DNA of 64,000 bases. Source: Dimorphilus gyrociliatus (Eukaryota > Animalia > Annelida). Below are positions 18,526 through 64,000 of this stretch, piece after piece. The number at the start of each line of letters is the position of its first letter. Positions within the stretch are counted from its first letter, which is position 1. The stretch is from the NCBI GenBank assembly GCA_904063045.1, contig CAJFCJ010000001.1:434001-498000 (forward strand), written 5' to 3'. Below the pieces are notes generated by a model. That model was not told the DNA's origin, searched no databases, and saw nothing but the letters and a program-made list of their open reading frames with translations. Both the position numbers and the translations under genes were made by a program.

Positions 18526-20393
18526 AATACAGCATATTGTAACACGCCATCTTGAGGAAATATTAGATGTAGATTATTTTTGACAGAGAAATTAAAAAGA
18601 GTTAAAAATAAGTGTAAACGATTTATCGAACGAAATGTAACAATAAAGAAAAACAGGGCAGTTGATTAAACTTTTCTTCTTTGCATCAAGTATATATTTT
18701 GATAAGCAGACAGAATGTAAATATATACTTAAAACTATACGAATATTTGAAGCTGTTAAGCAAATCCTCCCTGATTTTTCTTTCTTCCTTTATAAAAAAT
18801 ATACCAGTTTGTAGATTGAAAGAGAAAGAAAGAGAAGAGATTTTTATATCCTTAGATTATGTATCATAAAGAATTAAATAAAAAGGATTATGACTCATTT
18901 TAATGAAATGCTACACCATACTTGAATTTCTACATTTAGGGAATGAAACAACGTGAACAGATAGATTTTTATATTAGTTTTATGTATATATATATATATA
19001 TACTGTATATTTAAATAAATAACTCTTATCAAGGTTAAACAATTCAGTCTTAGAAGTGTAAACGTTTCGTTGATTTTATATGAAGAGGGTAAAGGAGAAA
19101 ACTAAATGTATTACATATCTGGATAATTGCAATACACCAATAAAATATTCATAATGAACTGATATCAGACGAAAATGGCGTCGTTAAGTCTGAGAATGGA
19201 TGGAGGCCTAAATGTTTACTTTTATGGGGAAATAATCTATTAAATTGAAAGGAAACATTCTTGCTGTTGACCTTCAAAAAAGAAATAATAAGGATATTTA
19301 AAGGATTATTGTGTTTTTTTTTGAAAATATATCAAATATCATTTATCAACAGAGCTACGTCGAGAAAAATATAATAAATGAAAATCAAGTACTTTTCCCA
19401 TTCCCTTTATGTTATCTATAAGAATATCTTTAAAAAAATAAACCTATAATTATGTTTACAGATTCTAGAAATACCTTTAAATATTTGCAATTCTATAAAA
19501 GTATACAAGCTTTTATGCTGTTAAACCTCTTCTAGAGAAAAGGGACTTTGGAATGAATTCGTACTTAATTGCGAATTAATTGTATAATTAAAGAAGATTT
19601 ATCCTTCTCAGGACTATTTGCTAGAATGAATGAATGAATAAATGCATAAATGAAAAGAATCTAATGGCAAATATATTATCCAGGTGGAGAATGTTCAATT
19701 TGAGATGATAAAAAATTTTCGTACTGTTGTGCTAAAGTCAATTAAAGTCTTACTTTAAAATAAAATATTTCTCACCGATTTCGTGTGAAAGGAAGGAACT
19801 TTAGGCCAAAGACTACATAATTAAAACGTTTTAATACGAAAATTATCGTTGTTAGGCATATTCTTAGATATTATATTCATATTGAATTTATTCTCTTACA
19901 TAATTGTATTTTTAGTTATGATGAATACAACTTTCAATAATTTCTCCCTCTCTTGTTTATATAGACGCCAGTCTTTTCCATACTTACGAATGTTGTACTA
20001 ATGTCAATGTAAACAAACTAGATGATTAAACTAAAGCAATAGCCATATATGGAAGATATTTATTGTGTAGCGATACTAGTGTCATCTACATTTGACTGAA
20101 TAATTATTATATGCTATTTATATTTGAAACATTTTATTACATTAAGGGAGTATCACATTTCTCAAATGTAGAGATATTGTTAATTGTAAATGATCTATAA
20201 ACTGTCTGGTATAGATTTTATGCTAAAAATTACTCACAAATTACACCACAGTCAGTAATGACCTCAGAAAATGATTCAATATGTCGCAATAGGAGCTATT
20301 CATATATAAGAATTCGCAGTAGACGATTTCTCTCATTTAACATTGTGTTTGCTATTATTTAATAAAAAATATTCCAATATCAAATATGCAAAA

Positions 20394-22967
20394 ATGGAGA
20401 GGACAAAAGAAAAGACTAAAGAAATGTCAAAATGGCGTCCAAATTTAAAAACCTTTATCGAAGAGGGAATAGATAAAGGTTTAGCTTATGAAGCAGCTAT
20501 TGCAGCATCAATTATATACAACAATATCGGAGTAAATGATTTCTTTTTGAAGGATTGGAATGTATTAAAAACTTTAATTAATCAAGATGACTATGGTATA
20601 TTGACTGCTGTGAAAATGTTTATTGAACTAAAAGATTCTTCCTATTATCTATATGATAAAACTATTAATATACAAACTGTCGAAAAGATTAACTCAGGTA
20701 TTGAAAGAATATCTACAAATACAGGAAGAGATTTGCATCCAATAAAGGACGTTGAAGGTAAGCTTTCAACTGAAAAATTGGGTTCGTTGATCTTTCATCA
20801 TTGTTGCAAAGATGTTTACGTTCATATCGGAAAAAACTACTATATGAATGCTAAAACTAGTGATACAGTAGAAATCAGAGACGAAGTATTAACACCGGAA
20901 TTTATTAGTTTTCCCCTAACTTGTAAAACTCCTATTAGAGTTGAAAGTAAATGGATTCAAGATGAACTCATCTCAAATGATATTATTAGACAAGATGATA
21001 TAGATATGATTAAGGACGAATTTGAACCTCTGCAATTGAAGGATTTTGGTGAGAAAGCTGTTGGAGGTAAACTTTGTTCTCTGCTGAATAGTTTCTATTC
21101 AAAAGAAAAATTGGAAAAGGAATGCTCACAGGTCTGTGGAAGTCGTCAGGTTATTTGGTTTGGTCAGGCTAAGTTTAAATGTCCGAAAAATTATCATTCA
21201 ATTTTAAAAGAGTTTCTTGAAGGAAAACTTAGAGAAATTGGCAAAATTTCATCCTTCGGCCTAACATTTATGACATTAAGTCCAGATATTGATGTTTGTC
21301 AGAAACATGGATTCGAACCATTGGAAGCTGTGGTAGAAGGAGATTTTTACTCTATTCGTTTATTAGTAGATAAAGCAACAGCTTGCTTATATAATCCAAC
21401 AACTGAAAAAGTGAAAGAAAAGCTTAATAAAATATTCGGAAATGTCACTTTTATTCACTCCAACGAATATTCTATTGACGATATTCTGGAAAATGATCAA
21501 GAGGAGCTTGAATGGGGCTTTGCCCAATTTGAATCAAAATGCTCTCCTATCAACAATCAATCTGAAATCATGGGTATGAGAGTAATCAAGGAGAAATACA
21601 TAGACCCAATTAAGTATTTGTCGGAAAGGAATCATATTTCAATTAAGGAAAAACTTTACTCCTATAAAGATAACATCTTATCAATTAATAAAGAATTGTT
21701 TTCTTTCATTAAAACATTTCTGAAGGATGCTCTATTTAAAGTTCAGAATGAAGATTTCTTCAACGAAGGAAACTTTTTAGTTAGGGACAATGCCGAAATT
21801 GAAATTATTATAAATAATCCTAAATTTGTTTCTATGAGAGATGTATTTACAAAACTTATCCCATTAATTAAACCAGATACCTGCAAGATATATAATTCAC
21901 TCTTTCCACTTGAATCAATGAAAATTAAACTAAATAATTGGCTAAAGAAGATGTTCAATACATATACAACTTATCATGATAATTTATGGTATGTTTATGG
22001 ATCAAGATCAGTAAAGAAAAAAGTAATCAAGTATTTATATAGATATGAAGCTGAAGAAGTCAAACAATATCATAGAATTAATTTGGAATTGTTAGATACG
22101 AATAATAGAGAGAATCTGAGGAAAATACAAAAAGTAACACAGGAAATTGACGATGGATATTTTGAAGAATCTCATTTAGTGGTGCTATGTAATTTAGATT
22201 TAGTATGTCAAATTCAAGATATAGTACTATATTCCGAAAGGACTGTAATTGGAGAAGGATTGAATTGTTTTTCCCATTTAGTAGACATTATCGATATTGA
22301 AAGTGTAGATAGTCATACAGATCGCCTGGATTGGAATGATGAGTCAAAATGCGATGAATGCGTTGTTTGTTTCCAAGTTCCCAATCAGAGCACAAGGTTA
22401 ATAAATTGTGGACACTCATATTGTACAGGTTGTTTTAAACAGCAATTAAATGTTAATATTACTCAAAGCTTAAAGTTGCCCATAACCTGTGCCGGTTGCG
22501 ATGAATCAATAAATAATTTGGAAATTGTCTATTCAGAAAAGAAACAGCAATTTAGAGTTCAGGGAGAAATTTACAAAATACTAGTTCAAAAATTCAAAGA
22601 ATTTACCTTTTGCCCAGGCCTCAAATGTTCAAATGGTTTAGTTTATTCAAAAGGTAAAACTCCCATGCAATGCATTTCCTGTAAATGTGAGGTATGCTCA
22701 AACTGTAAAGAGTTACATCTGGAAGGTGAAGATTGCTTTTCACAAAGGCAAATGTTTCAAAGAGAATATAAACTATGGTGTCTAGGAGATATAGTAAATA
22801 GGAAAATATGCCCGAGTTGTTCCTATGGAATTGAAAAAGAAGGAGGATGTAATCTTGTTTGGTGTAGATCATGTTCAAAATCAATTTGCTGGTACTGCCT
22901 AGATTTTTTTGAAAATAAACATTTGTGCTACAGTCATCTTTCTACCATGCATGGGGGCTATGCCTAA
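20394..22967 (+). CDS. RBR (RING1-IBR-Rcat) E3 ubiquitin ligase-like protein, intronless, paralog 1
   Basis: One long ORF (first ATG 20394). C-terminal RING1 (CVVC...CGHSYCTGC...CAGC), IBR (CPGLKC...CISCKCEVCSNCKELHLEGEDC) and Rcat (CPSCSYGIEKEGGCNLVWCRSCSKSICWYC), ending CYSHLSTMHGGYA. Confidence 0.88.
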   Translation: MERTKEKTKEMSKWRPNLKTFIEEGIDKGLAYEAAIAASIIYNNIGVNDFFLKDWNVLKTLINQDDYGILTAVKMFIELKDSSYYLYDKTINIQTVEKINSGIERISTNTGRDLHPIKDVEGKLSTEKLGSLIFHHCCKDVYVHIGKNYYMNAKTSDTVEIRDEVLTPEFISFPLTCKTPIRVESKWIQDELISNDIIRQDDIDMIKDEFEPLQLKDFGEKAVGGKLCSLLNSFYSKEKLEKECSQVCGSRQVIWFGQAKFKCPKNYHSILKEFLEGKLREIGKISSFGLTFMTLSPDIDVCQKHGFEPLEAVVEGDFYSIRLLVDKATACLYNPTTEKVKEKLNKIFGNVTFIHSNEYSIDDILENDQEELEWGFAQFESKCSPINNQSEIMGMRVIKEKYIDPIKYLSERNHISIKEKLYSYKDNILSINKELFSFIKTFLKDALFKVQNEDFFNEGNFLVRDNAEIEIIINNPKFVSMRDVFTKLIPLIKPDTCKIYNSLFPLESMKIKLNNWLKKMFNTYTTYHDNLWYVYGSRSVKKKVIKYLYRYEAEEVKQYHRINLELLDTNNRENLRKIQKVTQEIDDGYFEESHLVVLCNLDLVCQIQDIVLYSERTVIGEGLNCFSHLVDIIDIESVDSHTDRLDWNDESKCDECVVCFQVPNQSTRLINCGHSYCTGCFKQQLNVNITQSLKLPITCAGCDESINNLEIVYSEKKQQFRVQGEIYKILVQKFKEFTFCPGLKCSNGLVYSKGKTPMQCISCKCEVCSNCKELHLEGEDCFSQRQMFQREYKLWCLGDIVNRKICPSCSYGIEKEGGCNLVWCRSCSKSICWYCLDFFENKHLCYSHLSTMHGGYA

Positions 22968-23472: not shown

Positions 23473-26040
23473 ATGGCAAAAAATATCAGTAATCATTTAC
23501 TTTGCAGTTTATTTAAAACTGCTAAAGAAGAGCAGATTGTTTTGGAAACTCTTATAGCAGTTTCAATTATTCAGTTGGATATAAAACCTAGACAGTTATA
23601 TAATCGTGATAGAAAATCTAGTATTCTCAGGGAAATGGTTAGTAGAAAATATTTTGGAATTACGGCGTTGGTTTATGCAGTTAGAGAGTATTATTTTGGA
23701 GAGAAATTTAAAGATGTCCTAAATGTTAAAATTGTTAACAAAATCAAAAGAAACAGTTTCGAATTATATGAAAAATACTCTGATGATACAAAACATTTTA
23801 ATGAAATTAGACCATTGAAAAAAGAGAAATTTGAATATCATTTGGAAAATTTAATCTCAAAGATGTTTATTATTACAGCCTATCTACATTTAGAGGATAA
23901 TTCATACGTGAATATTACAGAAAGTAAAATATTTAAACTGTATGATGAAAAAATATATCCAGAGCTTATTGCCTATATTGCGAAATGTAGTACGCCATTT
24001 AAAATTAGCGAAGACTCACTTGAAAAAAAATACTTGGACTCTTCTAATGATGATTGGCTGACCAAAAAAACGTATCAAGGATCTATAGTCAAAAAACTTA
24101 ATGATGCTAGAGACGAATTTATTCCCTCCTCCATAAATTCATTTCAAAGTTCTCTGAAAACATTCTGGACTAATGAATCGTTAGAAAGATATTTGAGAAG
24201 AAAATTGAAAACAATAGTTCAAGTGTCTAATTCGACTGTTCTTTGTCCACCGAAATATAGATATCAGGTAAAGAGATTCCTCTCCAGAGAATTGTTAAAG
24301 GTAAAGAATTTTTCCACTTCGGAAATTAGAAGCTATCAACATCCTCATTTTCCTATCAGCGTTGCTCTAGAATCTGGTGTAAAAGCAGTAGATTTTGTTG
24401 ATCCTGACGAAGTAATGTCTGCTTCTATAACAATTAGCAAAGCTAATTACTTTTTTTATACTTTTAAAATAAAAGACTTAGAAACGGAGATTAAAAATCA
24501 AGTTGGACCAATGAGATGCTTTTACTACTGTCCTATAAATCATTCAGATCTTGTTAAGAACACTTCGGAAAACATGACTTTAGGTTTTGTTACTTTTTGT
24601 CATAAAAAGAGTATTCAGCACTTGAACAATTTTCATTGGAAAGGAGTTACTTTGAAACCGGACAATGATACAATACTTACGGAATTTGTAATAAAGAATA
24701 GTAAGAAGAAACACGATGTTTTATTTTCATTTGAAGATAAAACATTCAAACTTCAATCAAGATTTTTCTACTCAATTAAGAATTCTTTAGAGAAATTTGT
24801 CTATAATCTGAATAGATTCACTTTTAATGGTGAAGAAATTCTTTCTATTTCTAAATCTGGTGAAATTACTATTGGAAGAACTAAAGAATCAGCGCATTCG
24901 TTTAAGAGTGTTTTTCTAAGAGTTTTTCAATTTTTACAACCTGATCATTTGGAGACAAGCCAGATCTTATTTGAGAATGAGCTCATGAAGCTAAAGTTCA
25001 TCGAAAATTTACAAAGAATATTTGAGACGTACGTAGTAGCTGATGGAAATTCTTGGTTTATTTACGGATCAAGGGAAACAAAGAATCGGGTTAAAACATA
25101 CTTGATAAATTATTCTACGGGTAAAATACCATCTTATCAAATAATTTACTCATTCAAAGATATTAATGCCTTGGAAATGGCTATAAAATGGTCCAACAAT
25201 TTGTTAAACGAATTAAAAGATGTCTATATTGATTGGAAAAATCAAAATGTTGTCGCTTTAGGAGATTACGAGTCGAGATCAAATGTCGAAAAGTATCTTC
25301 AAACGGCAATCAAAATTGAAGAGGGGTCCGATAACGATTCAATGGGTGAAACTACTGATACAGAGGATATAAAGAAAGAAGACGAAGTAAATGAAAATAG
25401 TATGCCTGCGAGGTGTTCAATATGCTGGGAAAACTATACAGTATCAAAAGATGATATATTACCTTGCAAGCACTACTGTTGCCAAGAGTGCTTCGAAAAG
25501 TATATTATGACTTTGTTAGAAAGGTCTATGTATGGAATAGGAGCGGTAAAGTGTCCACGCTGTCCAGAGTTGTATAGAGTTATTAAGGTAAAGGAGAGAA
25601 TTTCAAAAATTCATTGGGATTTATTAGTGGAAAAGTCAAGTAACAATCTAATTTTCGAAGAGAGAAGAAAAAAGAACATCTCCATCTGCAAAAACAAAGA
25701 ATGTCATTTAGGCATTATAAATGAAAAGACATTGACTTGTTATAAATGTGCAAGCTCAGCATGTAATCTATGCAGAAATGTATCTCATCCAGGCGAACAG
25801 TGCCATCGTGCTAAAACAATCTTAGAGTCTGAATATAAAGCTTGGAGCTTGAAAAAGAGTGGAAGACCTTTTAGATACTGTCCAAATTGTCTTTTTGCAG
25901 CAGAAAGAATTAGCGGTTGTCGTTCAGTTAGTTGTAAATCTTGCGGCAAATATTTCTGCTGGGACTGTATAGATTATTTTTGTGACGATGAAATATTGAG
26001 CCATTCTTGTCGAAGAAAGTATACTCTTATAGACTTTTAA
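23473..26040 (+). CDS. RBR E3 ubiquitin ligase-like protein, intronless, paralog 2
   Basis: 855-aa ORF with RING1 (CSICW...CKHYCCQEC...CPRC), IBR (CKNKEC...CYKCASSACNLCRNVSHPGEQC) and Rcat (CPNC...SGCRSVSCKSCGKYFCWDC). It shares N-terminal blocks with the upstream ORF (WFIYGSRETKNRV versus WYVYGSRSVKKKV). Confidence 0.85.
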   Translation: MAKNISNHLLCSLFKTAKEEQIVLETLIAVSIIQLDIKPRQLYNRDRKSSILREMVSRKYFGITALVYAVREYYFGEKFKDVLNVKIVNKIKRNSFELYEKYSDDTKHFNEIRPLKKEKFEYHLENLISKMFIITAYLHLEDNSYVNITESKIFKLYDEKIYPELIAYIAKCSTPFKISEDSLEKKYLDSSNDDWLTKKTYQGSIVKKLNDARDEFIPSSINSFQSSLKTFWTNESLERYLRRKLKTIVQVSNSTVLCPPKYRYQVKRFLSRELLKVKNFSTSEIRSYQHPHFPISVALESGVKAVDFVDPDEVMSASITISKANYFFYTFKIKDLETEIKNQVGPMRCFYYCPINHSDLVKNTSENMTLGFVTFCHKKSIQHLNNFHWKGVTLKPDNDTILTEFVIKNSKKKHDVLFSFEDKTFKLQSRFFYSIKNSLEKFVYNLNRFTFNGEEILSISKSGEITIGRTKESAHSFKSVFLRVFQFLQPDHLETSQILFENELMKLKFIENLQRIFETYVVADGNSWFIYGSRETKNRVKTYLINYSTGKIPSYQIIYSFKDINALEMAIKWSNNLLNELKDVYIDWKNQNVVALGDYESRSNVEKYLQTAIKIEEGSDNDSMGETTDTEDIKKEDEVNENSMPARCSICWENYTVSKDDILPCKHYCCQECFEKYIMTLLERSMYGIGAVKCPRCPELYRVIKVKERISKIHWDLLVEKSSNNLIFEERRKKNISICKNKECHLGIINEKTLTCYKCASSACNLCRNVSHPGEQCHRAKTILESEYKAWSLKKSGRPFRYCPNCLFAAERISGCRSVSCKSCGKYFCWDCIDYFCDDEILSHSCRRKYTLIDF

Positions 26041-61375: not shown

Positions 61376-61454
61376 ACTCTAGCACAATTTTTTAGTGAAT
61401 GCGCTCTTTAACATAAATGTGTATAGCTATCTAATATAGCTAAAACCAGTCCAC

Positions 61455-61486
<32 letters not shown>

Positions 61487-61723
61487 GATATGTATATATA
61501 TTTATGTGTGCAATGAACTCTGACACGGTGTTAACAATATTAGTAGTTAATCTGGGAATGCAGCGGTTTTTCACTGCCGAAACATACATATACATATTTT
61601 TTTATTTACGGTACTATACAGTATAGATGATGAAAACTAAAATACATGATTGATAAGAACGAGAATTCGCAGATGTTGTTATTCTTTATAGTATATTAAT
61701 GGATAAGTTTCTTCGAAAGTTAA

Positions 61724-63419
61724 ATGATACTAGCAATGATGTTTCGGGCAACGTTGGTACTTTTTACTTTGGTCAATTTATCTTTCAGTCAAACTCCACT
61801 GAGTAAGTGTCGTTTATGTGTCTGTCAAAAAATACGATGAACATTTCCTTTAAAATTTAGAGAGGTACAATACCGATCCGAATCAAGTTAGTTATTCCGG
61901 TATTTCTGCGGGTGCTGCTATGGCCACCCAAATGCATGTTGCCTATTCGTCCGAGACTGTTGGTGTTGGTTTAATGGCGACTCGTAAGTTTTAATTAAAA
62001 TGAAAACAAAAAGCGCGTCTAGAAAAGTGTTTAATAAATGCTTTTCCAACTGTTTCAGCCGGTCCTTACTATTGCGCTGAAGGCAACTTATTCACCGCTT
62101 TAAACACTTGCATGGGATTCCCCAATGGAATCTATGTCGAGGATTGTATAACTGAAACTGAAAATTTCGCAAGAGAGGGTAGAATTGACCCCACCTCTAA
62201 TTTGAGAAATGATAAAGTTTTCATCCTTCACGGAAAGGAAGATCCTACCGTGGGAATTGGTAAAGACTTTTTTTTTATATCTGTCCTTGAACTAAAAAAA
62301 ACTTTTTGTTATCCTAAGATGCTGCTGCTAAAGTACGTCAGTATTATGAACATTACGGAGCTACAATTGCCGAAGAACTTAGTCTTTCTCTTGGACACGG
62401 TGTTCCAACCACAAATTATGGTATATCTTGCCCAGATACTTCATCACCCTACCTTAATAAGTGTAATTATGAGTACGTTTAGTCGCTCTTTGAGGAAAAT
62501 GAAGAAAAGATAATATTGTCTTTTTTTTATATTGTAGCGGTGCTTTCTCTCTTTTGAAGCATATTTATCCCGATATTATTAAACCATCAACTAACCATCA
62601 ACTCACTGGAAAACTACTTCGTTATGATCAAGAAGAATTTCAAAAAGATCCAAACGATCATAGCTTTGATGACGATGGTTTCGTGTATGTACCAGCTGCT
62701 TGTGAATTAGAAATGAACGATCTGTTTGCTCAAAATGAATGTGAAATTCCTGTTGGTGATCGTAAAAAATGCGGTTTCGATAGTATTACCGAAGAGCAAT
62801 GTATTGTCAATAGAGGTTGCTGCTGGCGTCCTGATGGTCCATTTAATTGTTTTGAAAAAGCAACTGCTGATAAATGTGCTGTAAGCGCTAATGATAGAGA
62901 GGAATGTGGATTTTCTGGAATCAATCAGACTATCTGCGAGAACGATAGGAATTGCTGTTGGAAAGAGGAGCAGCCTTATTATTGTTTTAGACCTAAGAGC
63001 GGAGGTCCTACTCCTGGAGGAAAATGTAAAGTTCATATGGTCTTTCACGGCTGTCTTCAAGGAAATGAAATGGTTGGCGAAGAATTTGTTCGAAATGCCG
63101 GATATAACGAAATTGCAGATGTTAACAACATTGTTGTTCTCTATCCAGAAGTTGTATCAAATGTCATGCTTGGAAACATGAACGGTTGCTATGACTGGTG
63201 GGGCTACGAGGATGAGAATTACGGTAATAACATAAGATAATTCTTACAAATATGATTTAATTACCAAAAGATATACATATATATATATATAAGTGACTTA
63301 TATTTATATTAATATATGCATATTTATATATTTCTATACATATATATACAGCGGTGAAAGACGGTGAGCAAATGTTGGCTGTATATAAAATGATTCAAAG
63401 AGTTTTGGGTCAAGATTAA
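61724..63419 (+). CDS. Secreted poly(3-hydroxybutyrate)/PHA depolymerase-like serine hydrolase with two inserted trefoil domains (436 aa)
   Basis: Exons 61724-61802, 61861-61983, 62059-62259, 62319-62472, 62538-63223 and 63352-63419 are phase-consistent. Signal peptide, GISAG (Ser), GPYYCA, HGKEDPTV (Asp), GHGVPT (His), GFVYVP, HMVFHGCLQ, GYNEIADVNNIVVLYP and NMNGCYDWWG match the fungal-type extracellular PHB depolymerase layout. Confidence 0.9.
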
Positions 63420-64000
63420 GAAGAAAGTACATTTTCATTTAAAAAAAAAAACACAAAAAAAATAAAAAACAGAAGAAGAAGAAGAAGAAGGAGGAGGAGG
63501 AGAAGGAGAAATAAATAAAGAAAAAAAAAAGCTGCACGATCAAATTATCTTTTATTAAAGAAACCTAACAAAAAAAAAAGTAAATATTGTTATACTACGC
63601 ATTTTGTTATAAATAAATTACTCTCTAATAAAATATTCTTTGGTATATAGAATCGAATGTTATGTAAACATATTCATTTATGTTACTATAAATATGTACA
63701 TTGTTTTATCGATTATGGGGAAAATTATCTTAATGTTACGAATTTTTTTCATAATTGAAAGTAGGAAGATTTCTATGATTAGTATGTAACTATTTACAGA
63801 AGAAATCGATAAAATATATACATATATATATATATGTATATATAAACAAATGTACGGCGTAAGGAGTAAGTTAATCAAAATGTCAAATATTTTTCATTAT
63901 AAGCAATTTGCGTAATTAATTACTTCACTATACTCGCGAGTATTGACGTATTGAATTAATGTAAATAATTCCAGTATTACTTGTCTAAAATGCCAATAAT

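What the first reader, a model, noticed from the sequence alone, without database searches (positions are those of the whole stretch)
61724..63419. Animal PHA/PHB depolymerase with two trefoil (P-type) domains inserted inside the catalytic domain
Seen: a spliced, secreted hydrolase with an intact triad (GISAG / HGKED / GHG), the FHGCLQ oxyanion motif and GCYDWWG. In family members as I recall them, only a short loop separates 'YVPxxC' from 'CxLHVALHGC'. Here about 100 extra residues lie there, forming two 6-Cys modules: CEIPVGDRKKCGFDSITEEQCIVNRGCCWRPDGPFNCF (62740-62859) and CAVSANDREECGFSGINQTICENDRNCCWKEEQPYYCF (62875-62994). Both fit the trefoil pattern C-x6-R-x2-CG-x3-I-x4-C-x4/5-CCW-x7-CF. 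Established: fungal-type PHB depolymerases use this Ser-Asp-His order. Trefoil domains are protease-resistant, glycan/mucin-binding modules of gut peptides and of sucrase-isomaltase/maltase-glucoamylase. Inference: this is a gut or mucus enzyme for digesting bacterial PHA storage granules (bioplastic), with the trefoils acting as a mucus tether or a new type of substrate-binding module. The insert lies mid-exon with no flanking introns. I know of no description of this architecture.
Basis: partly seen in the sequence, partly recalled or inferred. Interest (0 to 1): 0.9.

Follow-up and report, generated by a model that had tools for sequence, protein, structure and literature searches.

The report
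Annelid PHA depolymerase with nested trefoils
A tiny marine worm (Dimorphilus gyrociliatus) makes a secreted enzyme of the family that digests bacterial storage polyester, and two small sugar-binding-type "trefoil" modules lie in a surface loop of its catalytic domain; the enzyme family in animals was published in 2026, but I found no description of this nested layout.

Summary
Window 61724-63419 (+) holds a six-exon gene, all introns GT-AG. Its 436-aa product equals the public Dimorphilus gyrociliatus protein DgyrCDS95 from Met6 on. A spliced transcript contig in a public run removes all five introns and keeps the insert.

The protein passes NCBIfam's cut-off for type-2 extracellular short-chain PHA depolymerases. 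Triad, oxyanion Cys and fold match Penicillium funiculosum PHB depolymerase (2D80/2D81).

Between the two loop cysteines, 349 of 370 sampled homologues have 4-6 residues. This protein has 107, holding two Pfam Trefoil domains. Modelled alone, the insert hits only trefoil proteins in the PDB.

The insert is under purifying selection against a diverged relative that shares it. A Tara Oceans fragment has one trefoil at the same site. Owenia and Ptychodera have a phase-1 intron there, which suggests exon shuffling followed by intron loss.

Animal PHA depolymerases were described and assayed in August 2026, so only the nested trefoils are new. Their role is untested. I favour a glycan tether on the face away from the active site. 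The two TFF sugar-contact residues are not conserved.

The scan noted this same stretch twice before, in this genome only.

The parts
61511..63435 (+). Extent of the spliced transcript contig laid on the window (5' leader, CDS, start of the 3' UTR)
   Evidence: run X11, one 1621-nt contig with 0 mismatches. It lies in six pieces (61511-61802, 61861-61983, 62059-62258, 62318-62472, 62538-63222, 63351-63435). Four GT..AG joints are listed and the fifth is visible in the pieces table.
61724..63419 (+). Coding region: six exons (61724-61802, 61861-61983, 62059-62259, 62319-62472, 62538-63223, 63352-63419), stop at 63417-63419. The conserved start is probably 61739.
   Evidence: identical to DgyrCDS95 from Met6; the relative lacks the first ATG.
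61739..61792 (+). Predicted signal peptide (about 18 aa: a basic residue, a hydrophobic core, then SFSQ)
   Evidence: Read from the sequence. The 2D80 chain, from its residue 2, aligns from residue 20 of P0281 onwards. No SignalP run was possible.
61899..61913 (+). Lipase box GISAG with the nucleophile Ser (equivalent to Ser39 of 2D80)
   Evidence: aligned to GLSSG of 2D80
62229..62243 (+). HGKED, holding the catalytic Asp (equivalent to Asp121)
62393..62401 (+). GHG, holding the catalytic His (equivalent to His155)
62686..62703 (+). YVPAAC: end of the strand before the loop, with the first loop cysteine
62704..63024 (+). 107-aa insert between the two loop cysteines (linker, trefoil 1, 7-aa spacer, trefoil 2, Gly/Pro linker), entirely within exon 5
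   Evidence: dN/dS is 0.15 against the L001 orthologue.
62740..62853 (+). Trefoil domain 1 (six Cys, spacing C-9-C-9-C-5-CC-8-C)
   Evidence: Pfam PF00088. Alignment to TFF3 and PSP. Model of the insert alone.
62875..62988 (+). Trefoil domain 2 (same spacing; closest to the single trefoil of the Tara fragment P0131)
63025..63060 (+). Second loop cysteine, the following strand and the HGC oxyanion motif (Cys equivalent to Cys250 of 2D80)
   Evidence: DSSP of the model gives a strand at 344-350, directly after the insert.
63184..63204 (+). GCYDWWG. Its first Trp aligns with Trp307 of 2D80, which I recall as the substrate-recognition residue.
   Evidence: Alignment. The role of Trp307 is from my recollection of Hisano et al. 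2006 and was not checked here.

Best explanation
This is the Dimorphilus gyrociliatus gene DgyrCDS95. It encodes a secreted, vertically inherited annelid member of the extracellular short-chain-length PHA depolymerases with a type-2 (circularly permuted, Penicillium funiculosum-like) catalytic domain. It most likely hydrolyses poly(3-hydroxybutyrate)-type storage polyester from ingested bacteria.

The family's short, cysteine-flanked hairpin loop immediately precedes the strand that ends in the HGC oxyanion motif. In this lineage the loop carries two tandem trefoil (P-type) domains on Gly/Pro-rich or acidic linkers. The loop sits at the N-terminal end of that strand, so the trefoils should hang from the face of the alpha/beta fold opposite the catalytic crevice and leave catalysis intact.

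I infer that the trefoils act as a lectin-like tether. They would hold the enzyme on a glycan matrix (gut or surface mucus, glycocalyx, or bacterial surface glycans). Arthropod homologues carry a chitin-binding CBM14 domain, which I infer plays a comparable matrix-binding role.

The module probably entered by exon shuffling into an ancient phase-1 intron at exactly this site. It was then duplicated, and the flanking introns were lost.

Shown here: gene model, transcript, family membership, conserved catalytic residues, fold, trefoil identity, purifying selection, rarity of the insert, and the intron at the site in two other phyla. Inferred: substrate, secretion, tissue, position of the trefoils, trefoil ligand, and the order of evolutionary events.
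For: Gene and transcript. A contig from run X11 removes all five introns, has no mismatch to the window and keeps the insert.

Family: NF050059 e_dPHAscl_type2 scores 324.6 bits against a cut-off of 280. phmmer to 2D80 gives E 2.8e-38, with Ser, Asp, His and the oxyanion Cys aligned. The AlphaFold2 catalytic domain has pLDDT above 95. Foldseek puts 2D81 first at E 1.4e-27 with TM 0.88 by target.

Activity of the family in animals: enzymes from a sponge, an earthworm, a springtail and Olavius release hydroxybutyrate from PHB (PMC13642032).

Trefoils: Pfam E 5e-14 to 3e-16 in two stretches. PSP/TFF2 aligns across both domains. The model of the insert alone has pLDDT 72-84 in the domains, all 18 PDB hits are trefoil proteins, and TFF1 and TFF3 fit at rmsd 1.2-1.3 A.

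Selection: against the L001 orthologue, dS is about 1.1 and dN/dS is 0.106 overall, 0.15 for the insert, 0.04 for trefoil 1 and 0.13 for trefoil 2.

Rarity: the loop is 4-6 aa in 349 of 370 motif matches. Only P0281, P0001/L001 and P0131 carry trefoils. None was seen among the Atlas clusters listed or in the JGI metagenome scan.

Position: the strand at 344-350 follows the insert and HGC is at 351-353.

Origin: Owenia and Ptychodera have a phase-1 intron in the codon just before the second loop Cys. The tree puts Dimorphilus, L001, the Tara fragment and Owenia in one group (SH-aLRT 91.6), and monophyly of the three trefoil-bearing sequences is not rejected (p-AU 0.67).

Analogy: a C-terminal CBM14 was confirmed in P0313, and precomputed PF01607 hits mark P0326 and both Orchesella proteins.
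Against: Nothing was assayed for this protein, and no tissue data were found.

In the full-length model the insert has pLDDT below 50, because its alignment columns held only one other sequence. The orientation of the trefoils therefore rests on strand topology. I had no access to coordinates.

The TFF3 sugar-contact residues Asp20 and Trp47 are Lys/Asn in trefoil 1 and Glu/Tyr in trefoil 2. Loop 3 is 2-5 residues shorter than in the free invertebrate trefoils compared and 2 shorter than in TFF3. Glycan binding is thus plausible but not implied.

The linkers of about 12 residues could let the trefoils reach round to the catalytic face.

The exon-shuffling route is inferred. No intermediate with introns flanking a trefoil exon was found. 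That trefoil exons are class 1-1 is my recollection; the review I read does not name trefoils.
Confidence: 0.5

Rival explanations
1. The trefoil pair is a substrate-binding module. It adsorbs to PHA granules or their surface layer and replaces the C-terminal substrate-binding domain of bacterial depolymerases, which this single-domain enzyme lacks.
For: Bacterial type-2 enzymes in the searches often carry FN3 and further C-terminal domains. The fungal and animal enzymes lack them. A divalent module under purifying selection would suit adsorption to a surface.
Against: The insert is anchored at the end of the oxyanion strand that is far from the crevice. Bacterial binding domains sit on long terminal linkers. 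The trefoil ligands described in the paper I read are carbohydrates (PMC7221086), not hydrophobic polyesters. No similarity to a known PHA-binding domain appeared in Pfam.
Confidence: 0.15
2. The trefoils bind no ligand. They are a compact, disulfide-rich, protease- and acid-resistant addition that stabilises the enzyme or helps it fold and be secreted in a digestive lumen.
For: The TFF sugar-contact residues are not conserved. From general knowledge, trefoil domains are very protease-resistant. In GH31 glucosidases the trefoil is packed onto the enzyme body; these proteins appear among the structural hits.
Against: Homologues in many phyla do without any such module. Two copies on flexible-looking linkers are an unusual way to stabilise a domain that already models at pLDDT above 95. 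Trefoil 1 is very strongly constrained (dN/dS 0.04), including surface positions.
Confidence: 0.15
3. The enzyme has moved to another ester substrate. For example, it could remove acyl or acetyl groups from glycans or mucins to which the trefoils direct it, so it is no longer a PHA depolymerase in practice.
For: Pfam's Esterase_PHB family is named for esterases as well as PHB depolymerases, and weak hits to other esterase families appear. A lectin-type module attached to an esterase would suit a glycan-borne substrate.
Against: The protein passes the specific type-2 depolymerase model. It keeps the triad, the oxyanion Cys and the Trp aligned with Trp307. It groups with Owenia inside the animal depolymerase clade without an unusually long branch. 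Assayed animal members degrade PHB (PMC13642032).
Confidence: 0.1
4. The insert is a recent, neutral or mildly harmful accident that is tolerated in a permissive loop and has no function.
For: The loop varies somewhat in length across the family (up to 17 aa), so it tolerates change.
Against: The insert is kept intact, with all 12 trefoil cysteines, in a relative whose synonymous sites are near saturation. Its dN/dS is 0.15. A single-trefoil version exists in a third, more distant sequence. The insert is retained in the abundant transcript.
Confidence: 0.03

Closest known systems
Animal PHA depolymerases (PHADs) of Zeidler et al. 2026, Nat Ecol Evol (PMC13642032): Olavius algarvensis, Lumbricus rubellus, Folsomia candida, Amphimedon queenslandica and others
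   Same: Same family (domain type 2, lipase box before the oxyanion hole). All are intron-bearing host genes, most have a signal peptide, and the triad and oxyanion Cys are conserved. Annelid relatives (Owenia) are the nearest named sequences.
   Different: Neither trefoil domains nor Dimorphilus are mentioned in that paper's main text. Its supplements were not held, so I could not check whether this protein is in its tables. Apart from the three trefoil-bearing sequences, the animal homologues I retrieved have a loop of no more than 17 residues at this site.
Penicillium funiculosum PHB depolymerase (PDB 2D80 / 2D81)
   Same: Best sequence and structure match. It shares Ser39/Asp121/His155, the Cys250 oxyanion residue and the GCxDW Trp, and the two loop cysteines are also present.
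   Different: The fungal loop between the two cysteines is 6 residues, against 107 here. Foldseek reports 24% identity over its full alignment.
TFF2 / porcine spasmolytic polypeptide (PDB 1PSP, 1POS, 1PCP)
   Same: It has two tandem trefoil domains and aligns across both domains of the insert. From my own knowledge, its N- and C-termini are tied by a disulfide. Here the pair is bracketed by the two loop cysteines of the host domain, which is a similar arrangement.
   Different: TFF2 is a free secreted peptide lectin. Here the pair is nested inside an enzyme domain. Compared with vertebrate TFFs, loop 3 is two residues shorter, the C3-C4 spacing is one residue longer, and the Asn/Asp and Trp sugar contacts are replaced. 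The relative orientation of the two modelled domains differs (rmsd 10.5 A over 100 columns) and is not reliable.
Trefoil domains of GH31 glycosidases (lysosomal alpha-glucosidase, sucrase-isomaltase, maltase-glucoamylase)
   Same: A trefoil is attached to a digestive hydrolase. These proteins are among the structural hits. PMC7221086 reports evidence that the trefoil of lysosomal alpha-glucosidase binds isomaltose.
   Different: There the trefoil is N-terminal to the catalytic domain and the enzyme is a glycosidase. Here it is inserted within the catalytic domain of an esterase.
Arthropod PHADs with a C-terminal CBM14 (peritrophin-A) chitin-binding domain (P0313, P0326, both Orchesella proteins)
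   Same: A lineage-specific addition of an extracellular matrix- or glycan-binding module to the same enzyme family.
   Different: It is a terminal fusion rather than an insertion, and the module and presumed ligand (chitin) differ.

Membership tests
Extracellular short-chain-length PHA depolymerase, catalytic domain type 2 (NCBIfam NF050059) | Whole-protein HMM score above the curated cut-off | tested here: met
   P0281 scores 324.6 bits against a cut-off of 280, E 6e-97, in two stretches split by the insert.
Extracellular short-chain-length PHA depolymerase, catalytic domain type 2 (NCBIfam NF050059) | Lipase box GxSxG lies before the oxyanion-hole motif (order Ser, Asp, His, then HGC) | tested here: met
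   In the 436-aa numbering: GISAG from residue 40, the Asp of HGKED at 129, the His of GHG at 161, the Cys of HGC at 358. The definition of the order is in PMC13642032.
Extracellular short-chain-length PHA depolymerase, catalytic domain type 2 (NCBIfam NF050059) | Catalytic triad and oxyanion residue align with Ser39, Asp121, His155 and Cys250 of 2D80 | tested here: met
   phmmer alignment. The chain index plus 20 gives the published numbering, which I checked on GLSSG.
Extracellular short-chain-length PHA depolymerase, catalytic domain type 2 (NCBIfam NF050059) | Circularly permuted alpha/beta-hydrolase fold of 2D80 | tested here: met
   The AlphaFold2 model has pLDDT above 95 outside the insert. 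Foldseek gives 2D81 at E 1.4e-27, TM 0.88 by target.
Extracellular short-chain-length PHA depolymerase, catalytic domain type 2 (NCBIfam NF050059) | Secretion signal | tested here: inconclusive
   The N-terminus reads as a typical signal peptide and lies ahead of the part that aligns with the 2D80 chain. No signal-peptide predictor was available.
Extracellular short-chain-length PHA depolymerase, catalytic domain type 2 (NCBIfam NF050059) | Hydrolysis of PHB/PHV to hydroxyalkanoate monomers | not testable with these tools
   Shown for other animal members in PMC13642032, not for this protein.
Trefoil (P-type) domain, Pfam PF00088 | HMM score above the gathering threshold, once per domain | tested here: met
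   52.3-59.4 bits against a cut-off of 21, in two stretches. Each domain alone hits PSP and TFF3 at E 4e-6 to 3e-5.
Trefoil (P-type) domain, Pfam PF00088 | Six cysteines with a CC doublet, plus the conserved Arg, the Gly after Cys2 and an aromatic residue after the CC doublet | tested here: met
   All six Cys columns align with 14 free trefoil domains. Compared with those, the C3-C4 spacing is 5 instead of 4 and the C5-C6 spacing is 8 instead of 10-13.
Trefoil (P-type) domain, Pfam PF00088 | Trefoil fold (a short helix and a two-stranded hairpin) | tested here: met
   In the model of the insert alone the domains have pLDDT 72-84. TFF3 fits at rmsd 1.3 A (TM 0.69 by target) and TFF1 at 1.2 A (0.72). 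All 18 PDB hits are trefoil proteins. Confidence is moderate because the alignment was shallow.
Trefoil (P-type) domain, Pfam PF00088 | Disulfide pattern 1-5, 2-4, 3-6 | not testable with these tools
   The tools return no model coordinates.
TFF-type lectins that bind GlcNAc-alpha-1,4-Gal | Asp/Asn before Cys2 and Trp before Cys6 (Asp20 and Trp47 of TFF3) | tested here: not met
   Trefoil 1 has Lys and Asn at these positions; trefoil 2 has Glu and Tyr (residues defined in PMC7221086). I therefore do not file the domains as TFF-type lectins. Some other glycan specificity remains possible.
Bacterial PHA depolymerase substrate-binding domains | Sequence similarity of the added module to a known PHA-binding domain or linker | tested here: not met
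   Pfam finds only Trefoil in the insert.

The most novel reading that the evidence does not exclude
The nested trefoil pair is a functional targeting device of a kind not described for any esterase. It would be either a lectin that pins a bacterial-polyester-digesting enzyme to mucus or to bacterial surfaces, or a new type of PHA-granule-binding module. It would have been created by exon shuffling into a bilaterian-old phase-1 intron inside a catalytic domain. That would make it a clean natural example of domain insertion by intron-mediated shuffling, and the first trefoil domain with a role outside mucins, glycosidases and egg coats.
Probability: 0.3. Interest if true: 0.6.

Novelty: new variant of a known kind. 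Interest (0 to 1): 0.42.

Why it matters
The main point, that animals encode their own PHA depolymerases, was published in 2026. This locus adds a lineage-specific elaboration.

First, it shows that the hairpin loop before the oxyanion strand tolerates a 100-residue double-domain insertion. That is useful to know for anyone who wants to graft binding modules into PHA or polyester depolymerases.

Second, it extends the partners of trefoil domains beyond TFF peptides, GH31 glycosidases and zona pellucida proteins to an esterase. It also supplies a natural with-and-without contrast (Dimorphilus against Owenia) for testing what an invertebrate trefoil binds.

Third, the exact match between the insertion site and a phase-1 intron shared by an annelid and a hemichordate makes this a testable case of exon shuffling into the middle of a catalytic domain, followed by intron loss in a compacted genome.

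Tried and rejected
1. Full-length AlphaFold2 with 112 sequences. MAFFT did not place the trefoil slices in the insert columns, which held only P0001. The insert came out below pLDDT 50. I re-ran the insert alone.

2. Looking for the genomic context of the single-trefoil fragment P0131. No gene is on record. It comes from a marine eukaryote catalogue under a Tara Oceans run, ERR550532, so its introns and organism remain unknown.

3. A scan of JGI metagenome contigs with the junction between trefoil 2 and the oxyanion strand. It found only a tandem-trefoil GH13 amylase (L006), not a depolymerase.

4. ESM Atlas. No listed cluster combines the trefoil and depolymerase families.

5. Horizontal transfer or contamination. 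I rejected this because the gene has host-type short introns, lies among animal genes, and sits within the animal clade next to Owenia.

6. The 200-bp conserved stretch upstream as a structured RNA. No Rfam family reaches its gathering score, and the folding z-score is +0.88.

7. Literature on a trefoil joined to a PHB depolymerase, or on DgyrCDS95. Nothing relevant turned up.

8. The genomic locus of Pomacea P0292 is not on record.
Full report
**What is there.** Translating the three forward frames of 61700-63450 and joining them at canonical splice sites gives a six-exon gene on the + strand: 61724-61802, 61861-61983, 62059-62259, 62319-62472, 62538-63223 and 63352-63419. All donors are GT and all acceptors AG. 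The introns are 58, 75, 59, 65 and 128 nt, and the product is 436 aa.

From its sixth residue on, the product is identical to DgyrCDS95 of Dimorphilus gyrociliatus, 431 aa (NCBI CAD5110723.1, UniProt A0A7I8V7Y6). The window therefore comes from this miniature annelid. Its compact gene layout, 33% G+C and animal neighbours fit that origin. The neighbours include a single-exon alpha-tubulin, GPCR-like ORFs and a Notum-like ORF, and earlier notes of the scan add an NTPDase.

A relative's genomic contig (L001, from a Logan assembly) has ATC where the window has its first ATG, but it keeps the second ATG. The conserved start is therefore probably 61739, as in the public annotation.

**Transcription.** Contigs of four public runs were laid on 61400-63700. 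Run X11 holds one 1621-nt contig that matches the window without a mismatch in six pieces. The gaps between the pieces are exactly the five introns of the model, and the piece 62538-63222 is continuous, so the insert is retained. Contigs do not show rare isoforms, so a minor form without the insert is not excluded. Short contigs from three RNA or probably-RNA runs also cover the trefoil region at 90-99% or more identity. One of these runs is a coral-tank metatranscriptome. A loose end in another run reads on into exon-6-like sequence, which means a relative's transcript is spliced there.

**The enzyme part.**
- P0281 scores 324.6 bits on NCBIfam NF050059, the model for extracellular type-2 short-chain-length PHA depolymerases, against a curated cut-off of 280. 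The match falls in two stretches, split by the insert. The exon pieces had already hit successive parts of the same profile.
- phmmer against PDB sequences puts Penicillium funiculosum PHB depolymerase (2D80/2D81) first at E 2.8e-38. In that alignment GLSSG pairs with GISAG, the catalytic Asp with the Asp of HGKED, the catalytic His with the His of GHG, and the HGC oxyanion Cys with HGC. The Trp aligned with Trp307 is also kept.
- An AlphaFold2 model built on 112 sequences has pLDDT above 95 over the whole catalytic domain. Foldseek finds 2D81 at E 1.4e-27, TM 0.88 by target. The next hits are about 1e-3.

**The insert.**
- In all other homologues retrieved, the motif YVPxxC is followed after a few residues by a second Cys and the strand that ends in HGC. 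Over 370 motif matches in 387 retrieved proteins, the stretch between the cysteines is 4-6 residues in 349 and at most 17 otherwise. The only exceptions are the three trefoil-bearing sequences (57, 105 and 107 residues) and one artefact from a tandem-duplicated enzyme. BLASTP of the model gives two segments, 26-241 and 349-436, to every relative (alignment).
- The 107 residues hold two Pfam Trefoil domains (E 3e-16 on exon 5, E 5e-14 on the full protein, two stretches, cut-off 21 bits). Porcine spasmolytic polypeptide (TFF2) aligns across both domains.
- In the full-length model the insert was below pLDDT 50. The alignment explains this: MAFFT had left only one other sequence in those columns.
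- Modelled alone, with 17 other rows (slices of the two related depolymerases and of free trefoil proteins) whose six Cys columns all align, the two domains reach pLDDT 72-84. Each shows a short helix followed by paired short strands. All 18 PDB matches are trefoil proteins: PSP at E 1.2e-5, TFF3 at rmsd 1.3 A, TFF1 at 1.2 A, then acid alpha-glucosidase, ZP1, MGAM and sucrase-isomaltase.
- The trefoils borne on depolymerases share two oddities against free invertebrate trefoils: five instead of four residues between Cys3 and Cys4, and eight instead of ten to thirteen between Cys5 and Cys6.

**Is the insert maintained?** L001, the 2013-bp genomic contig of the relative, has the same six exons and an intact orthologue with both trefoils. 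Synonymous divergence is about 1.1. dN/dS is 0.106 overall, 0.08 for the catalytic parts, 0.15 for the insert, 0.04 for trefoil 1 and 0.13 for trefoil 2. The insert is thus constrained much like the enzyme itself.

**How widespread is the architecture?**
- An exhaustive HMMER pass of exon 5 over 1.84 billion cluster representatives gave 1813 hits. Only two reached E 1e-30 or better: P0001 (the L001 protein) and P0131.
- P0131 is a 140-aa fragment from a marine eukaryote catalogue under a Tara Oceans run. It has one trefoil at the same site. That trefoil is closest to trefoil 2 and has the same odd spacings.
- No cluster listed by the ESM Atlas search combines the two families. A scan of JGI metagenome contigs with the junction found only an unrelated amylase with two trefoils.
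- In a maximum-likelihood tree the eukaryotic sequences separate from the bacterial ones with full support. Dimorphilus, L001, the Tara fragment and the three Owenia paralogues form one group (SH-aLRT 91.6). Holding the three trefoil-bearing sequences together is not rejected, and the constrained tree is in fact slightly better (p-AU 0.67).
- This fits a single insertion in one annelid lineage, followed by a tandem duplication. It is also consistent with vertical inheritance rather than gene transfer.

**How the insert may have arisen.** In Owenia fusiformis (L003) and in the hemichordate Ptychodera flava (L004), an intron interrupts the codon just before the second loop cysteine, after its first base. 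This is a phase-1 intron at exactly the insertion site. Daphnia (L005) has none there. Dimorphilus exon 5 spans this position and at least three other Owenia intron positions, so introns were lost in this part of the gene. Mobile extracellular modules of animals are typically flanked by phase-1 introns (PMC8001218). That trefoil exons are of this class is my recollection and was not tested here. The simplest route is therefore insertion of a trefoil exon into the old intron, then duplication, then loss of the flanking introns. No intermediate was found.

**What it probably does.** The family's activity in animals is now established. Zeidler et al. (Nat Ecol Evol, August 2026; PMC13642032) showed that enzymes from Olavius, an earthworm, a springtail and a sponge release hydroxybutyrate from PHB. 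They report homologues in 66 gut-bearing species of nine phyla, about 75% of them with signal peptides. My third search shows the same spread: molluscs, amphibians, crustaceans, echinoderms, a hemichordate, a rotifer and a sponge. Many are already named "poly(3-hydroxybutyrate) depolymerase-like". From my own knowledge, D. gyrociliatus grazes on biofilm, so a secreted digestive depolymerase is the natural reading.

For the trefoils I rely on anatomy:
- The strand that follows the insert (344-350) ends in the HGC oxyanion residue (351-353). Its start, and hence the insert, lies a strand's length away, on the side of the sheet opposite the crevice. I infer this from the secondary structure, because the tools return no coordinates.
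- That position argues against a lid. It also argues somewhat against a polymer-adsorption role, and it fits a tether.
- PMC7221086 reports carbohydrate binding by TFF1-3 and evidence for it in the trefoil of lysosomal alpha-glucosidase. However, the two side chains that contact GlcNAc-alpha-1,4-Gal in TFF3 are Lys/Asn in trefoil 1 and Glu/Tyr in trefoil 2. The ligand, if there is one, need not be a mucin glycan.
- Several arthropod homologues carry a C-terminal chitin-binding CBM14 domain. This is an independent case of a matrix-binding module added to the same enzyme.

My estimates are about 0.95 for the architecture, 0.8 for PHA depolymerase activity, 0.5 for a glycan tether, and 0.15 each for substrate binding and for a purely structural role.

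**Novelty.** The protein also sits in public databases with automatic Trefoil and Esterase_PHB hits. I found no paper that mentions a trefoil in a PHA depolymerase, or this protein. The 2026 paper's main text contains neither "trefoil" nor "Dimorphilus", and its supplements were not held. I class the finding as a new variant of a known kind. The scan had noted this same stretch twice before in overlapping reads of this genome (s1-080343, s1-081694) and not on other DNA.

**Left unexplained.** The 200 bp just upstream of the start codon (61500-61700) lie inside the transcript contig. They are 96% identical to L001, while exons are 70-85% and most introns 52-69% identical. No Rfam family and no unusual folding energy explain this.

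Noticed in passing
window 61500-61700: The 200 bp upstream of the start codon, inside the transcript contig, are 96% identical (191/199) to the relative's contig L001. Exons are 70-85% and most introns 52-69% identical, and dS is about 1.1. No Rfam family reaches its gathering score and the folding z-score is +0.88. Possible readings: a conserved leader or regulatory element, the 3' UTR of the upstream gene, gene conversion, or a chimeric contig.
   Followed up: partly
window 62280-62350: The 3' half of intron 3 and the first 30 nt of exon 4 are almost identical between the window and L001, unlike the other introns (intron 3 is 86% identical overall).
   Followed up: no
window 61699-61806 and 61724: The leader holds several upstream ATGs, including a 35-codon out-of-frame ORF that overlaps the start. 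The first in-frame ATG (61724) is not conserved in the relative, so translation probably starts at 61739.
   Followed up: partly
L006:87-1907 (metagenome contig Ga0307389_10048576): A G+C-rich 606-aa ORF has a signal-like N-terminus, two canonical trefoil domains (with PWCF) joined by Pro/Ser linkers, and what reads as an alpha-amylase-like (GH13-like) catalytic domain; I ran no family search on it. It may be another pairing of trefoils with a hydrolase outside GH31.
   Followed up: no
P0313, P0326, P0339, P0346 (arthropod homologues): These animal PHA depolymerases of 420-433 aa carry a CBM14 (peritrophin-A) chitin-binding domain. Its C-terminal position was confirmed by Pfam for P0313 and rests on precomputed hits for the others.
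   Followed up: partly
P0277-P0280 (Corticium candelabrum, Orchesella cincta and two Logan proteins): These homologues of 550-700 aa appear to hold two depolymerase catalytic domains in tandem. The regex spans a complete second domain in P0280.
   Followed up: no
L003:10675-12815 (Owenia fusiformis): A second depolymerase paralogue (P0079) lies directly downstream of P0003 on the same strand, so Owenia has a tandem gene pair. A third paralogue (P0162, 497 aa) is on the same 34.9-Mb contig.
   Followed up: no
window 20343-22967 and 23473-26040: Two adjacent long single-exon ORFs on the same strand (874 and 855 aa) are paralogous in layout and have Cys/His-rich C-termini that look like RING-between-RING E3 ligases.
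   Followed up: no
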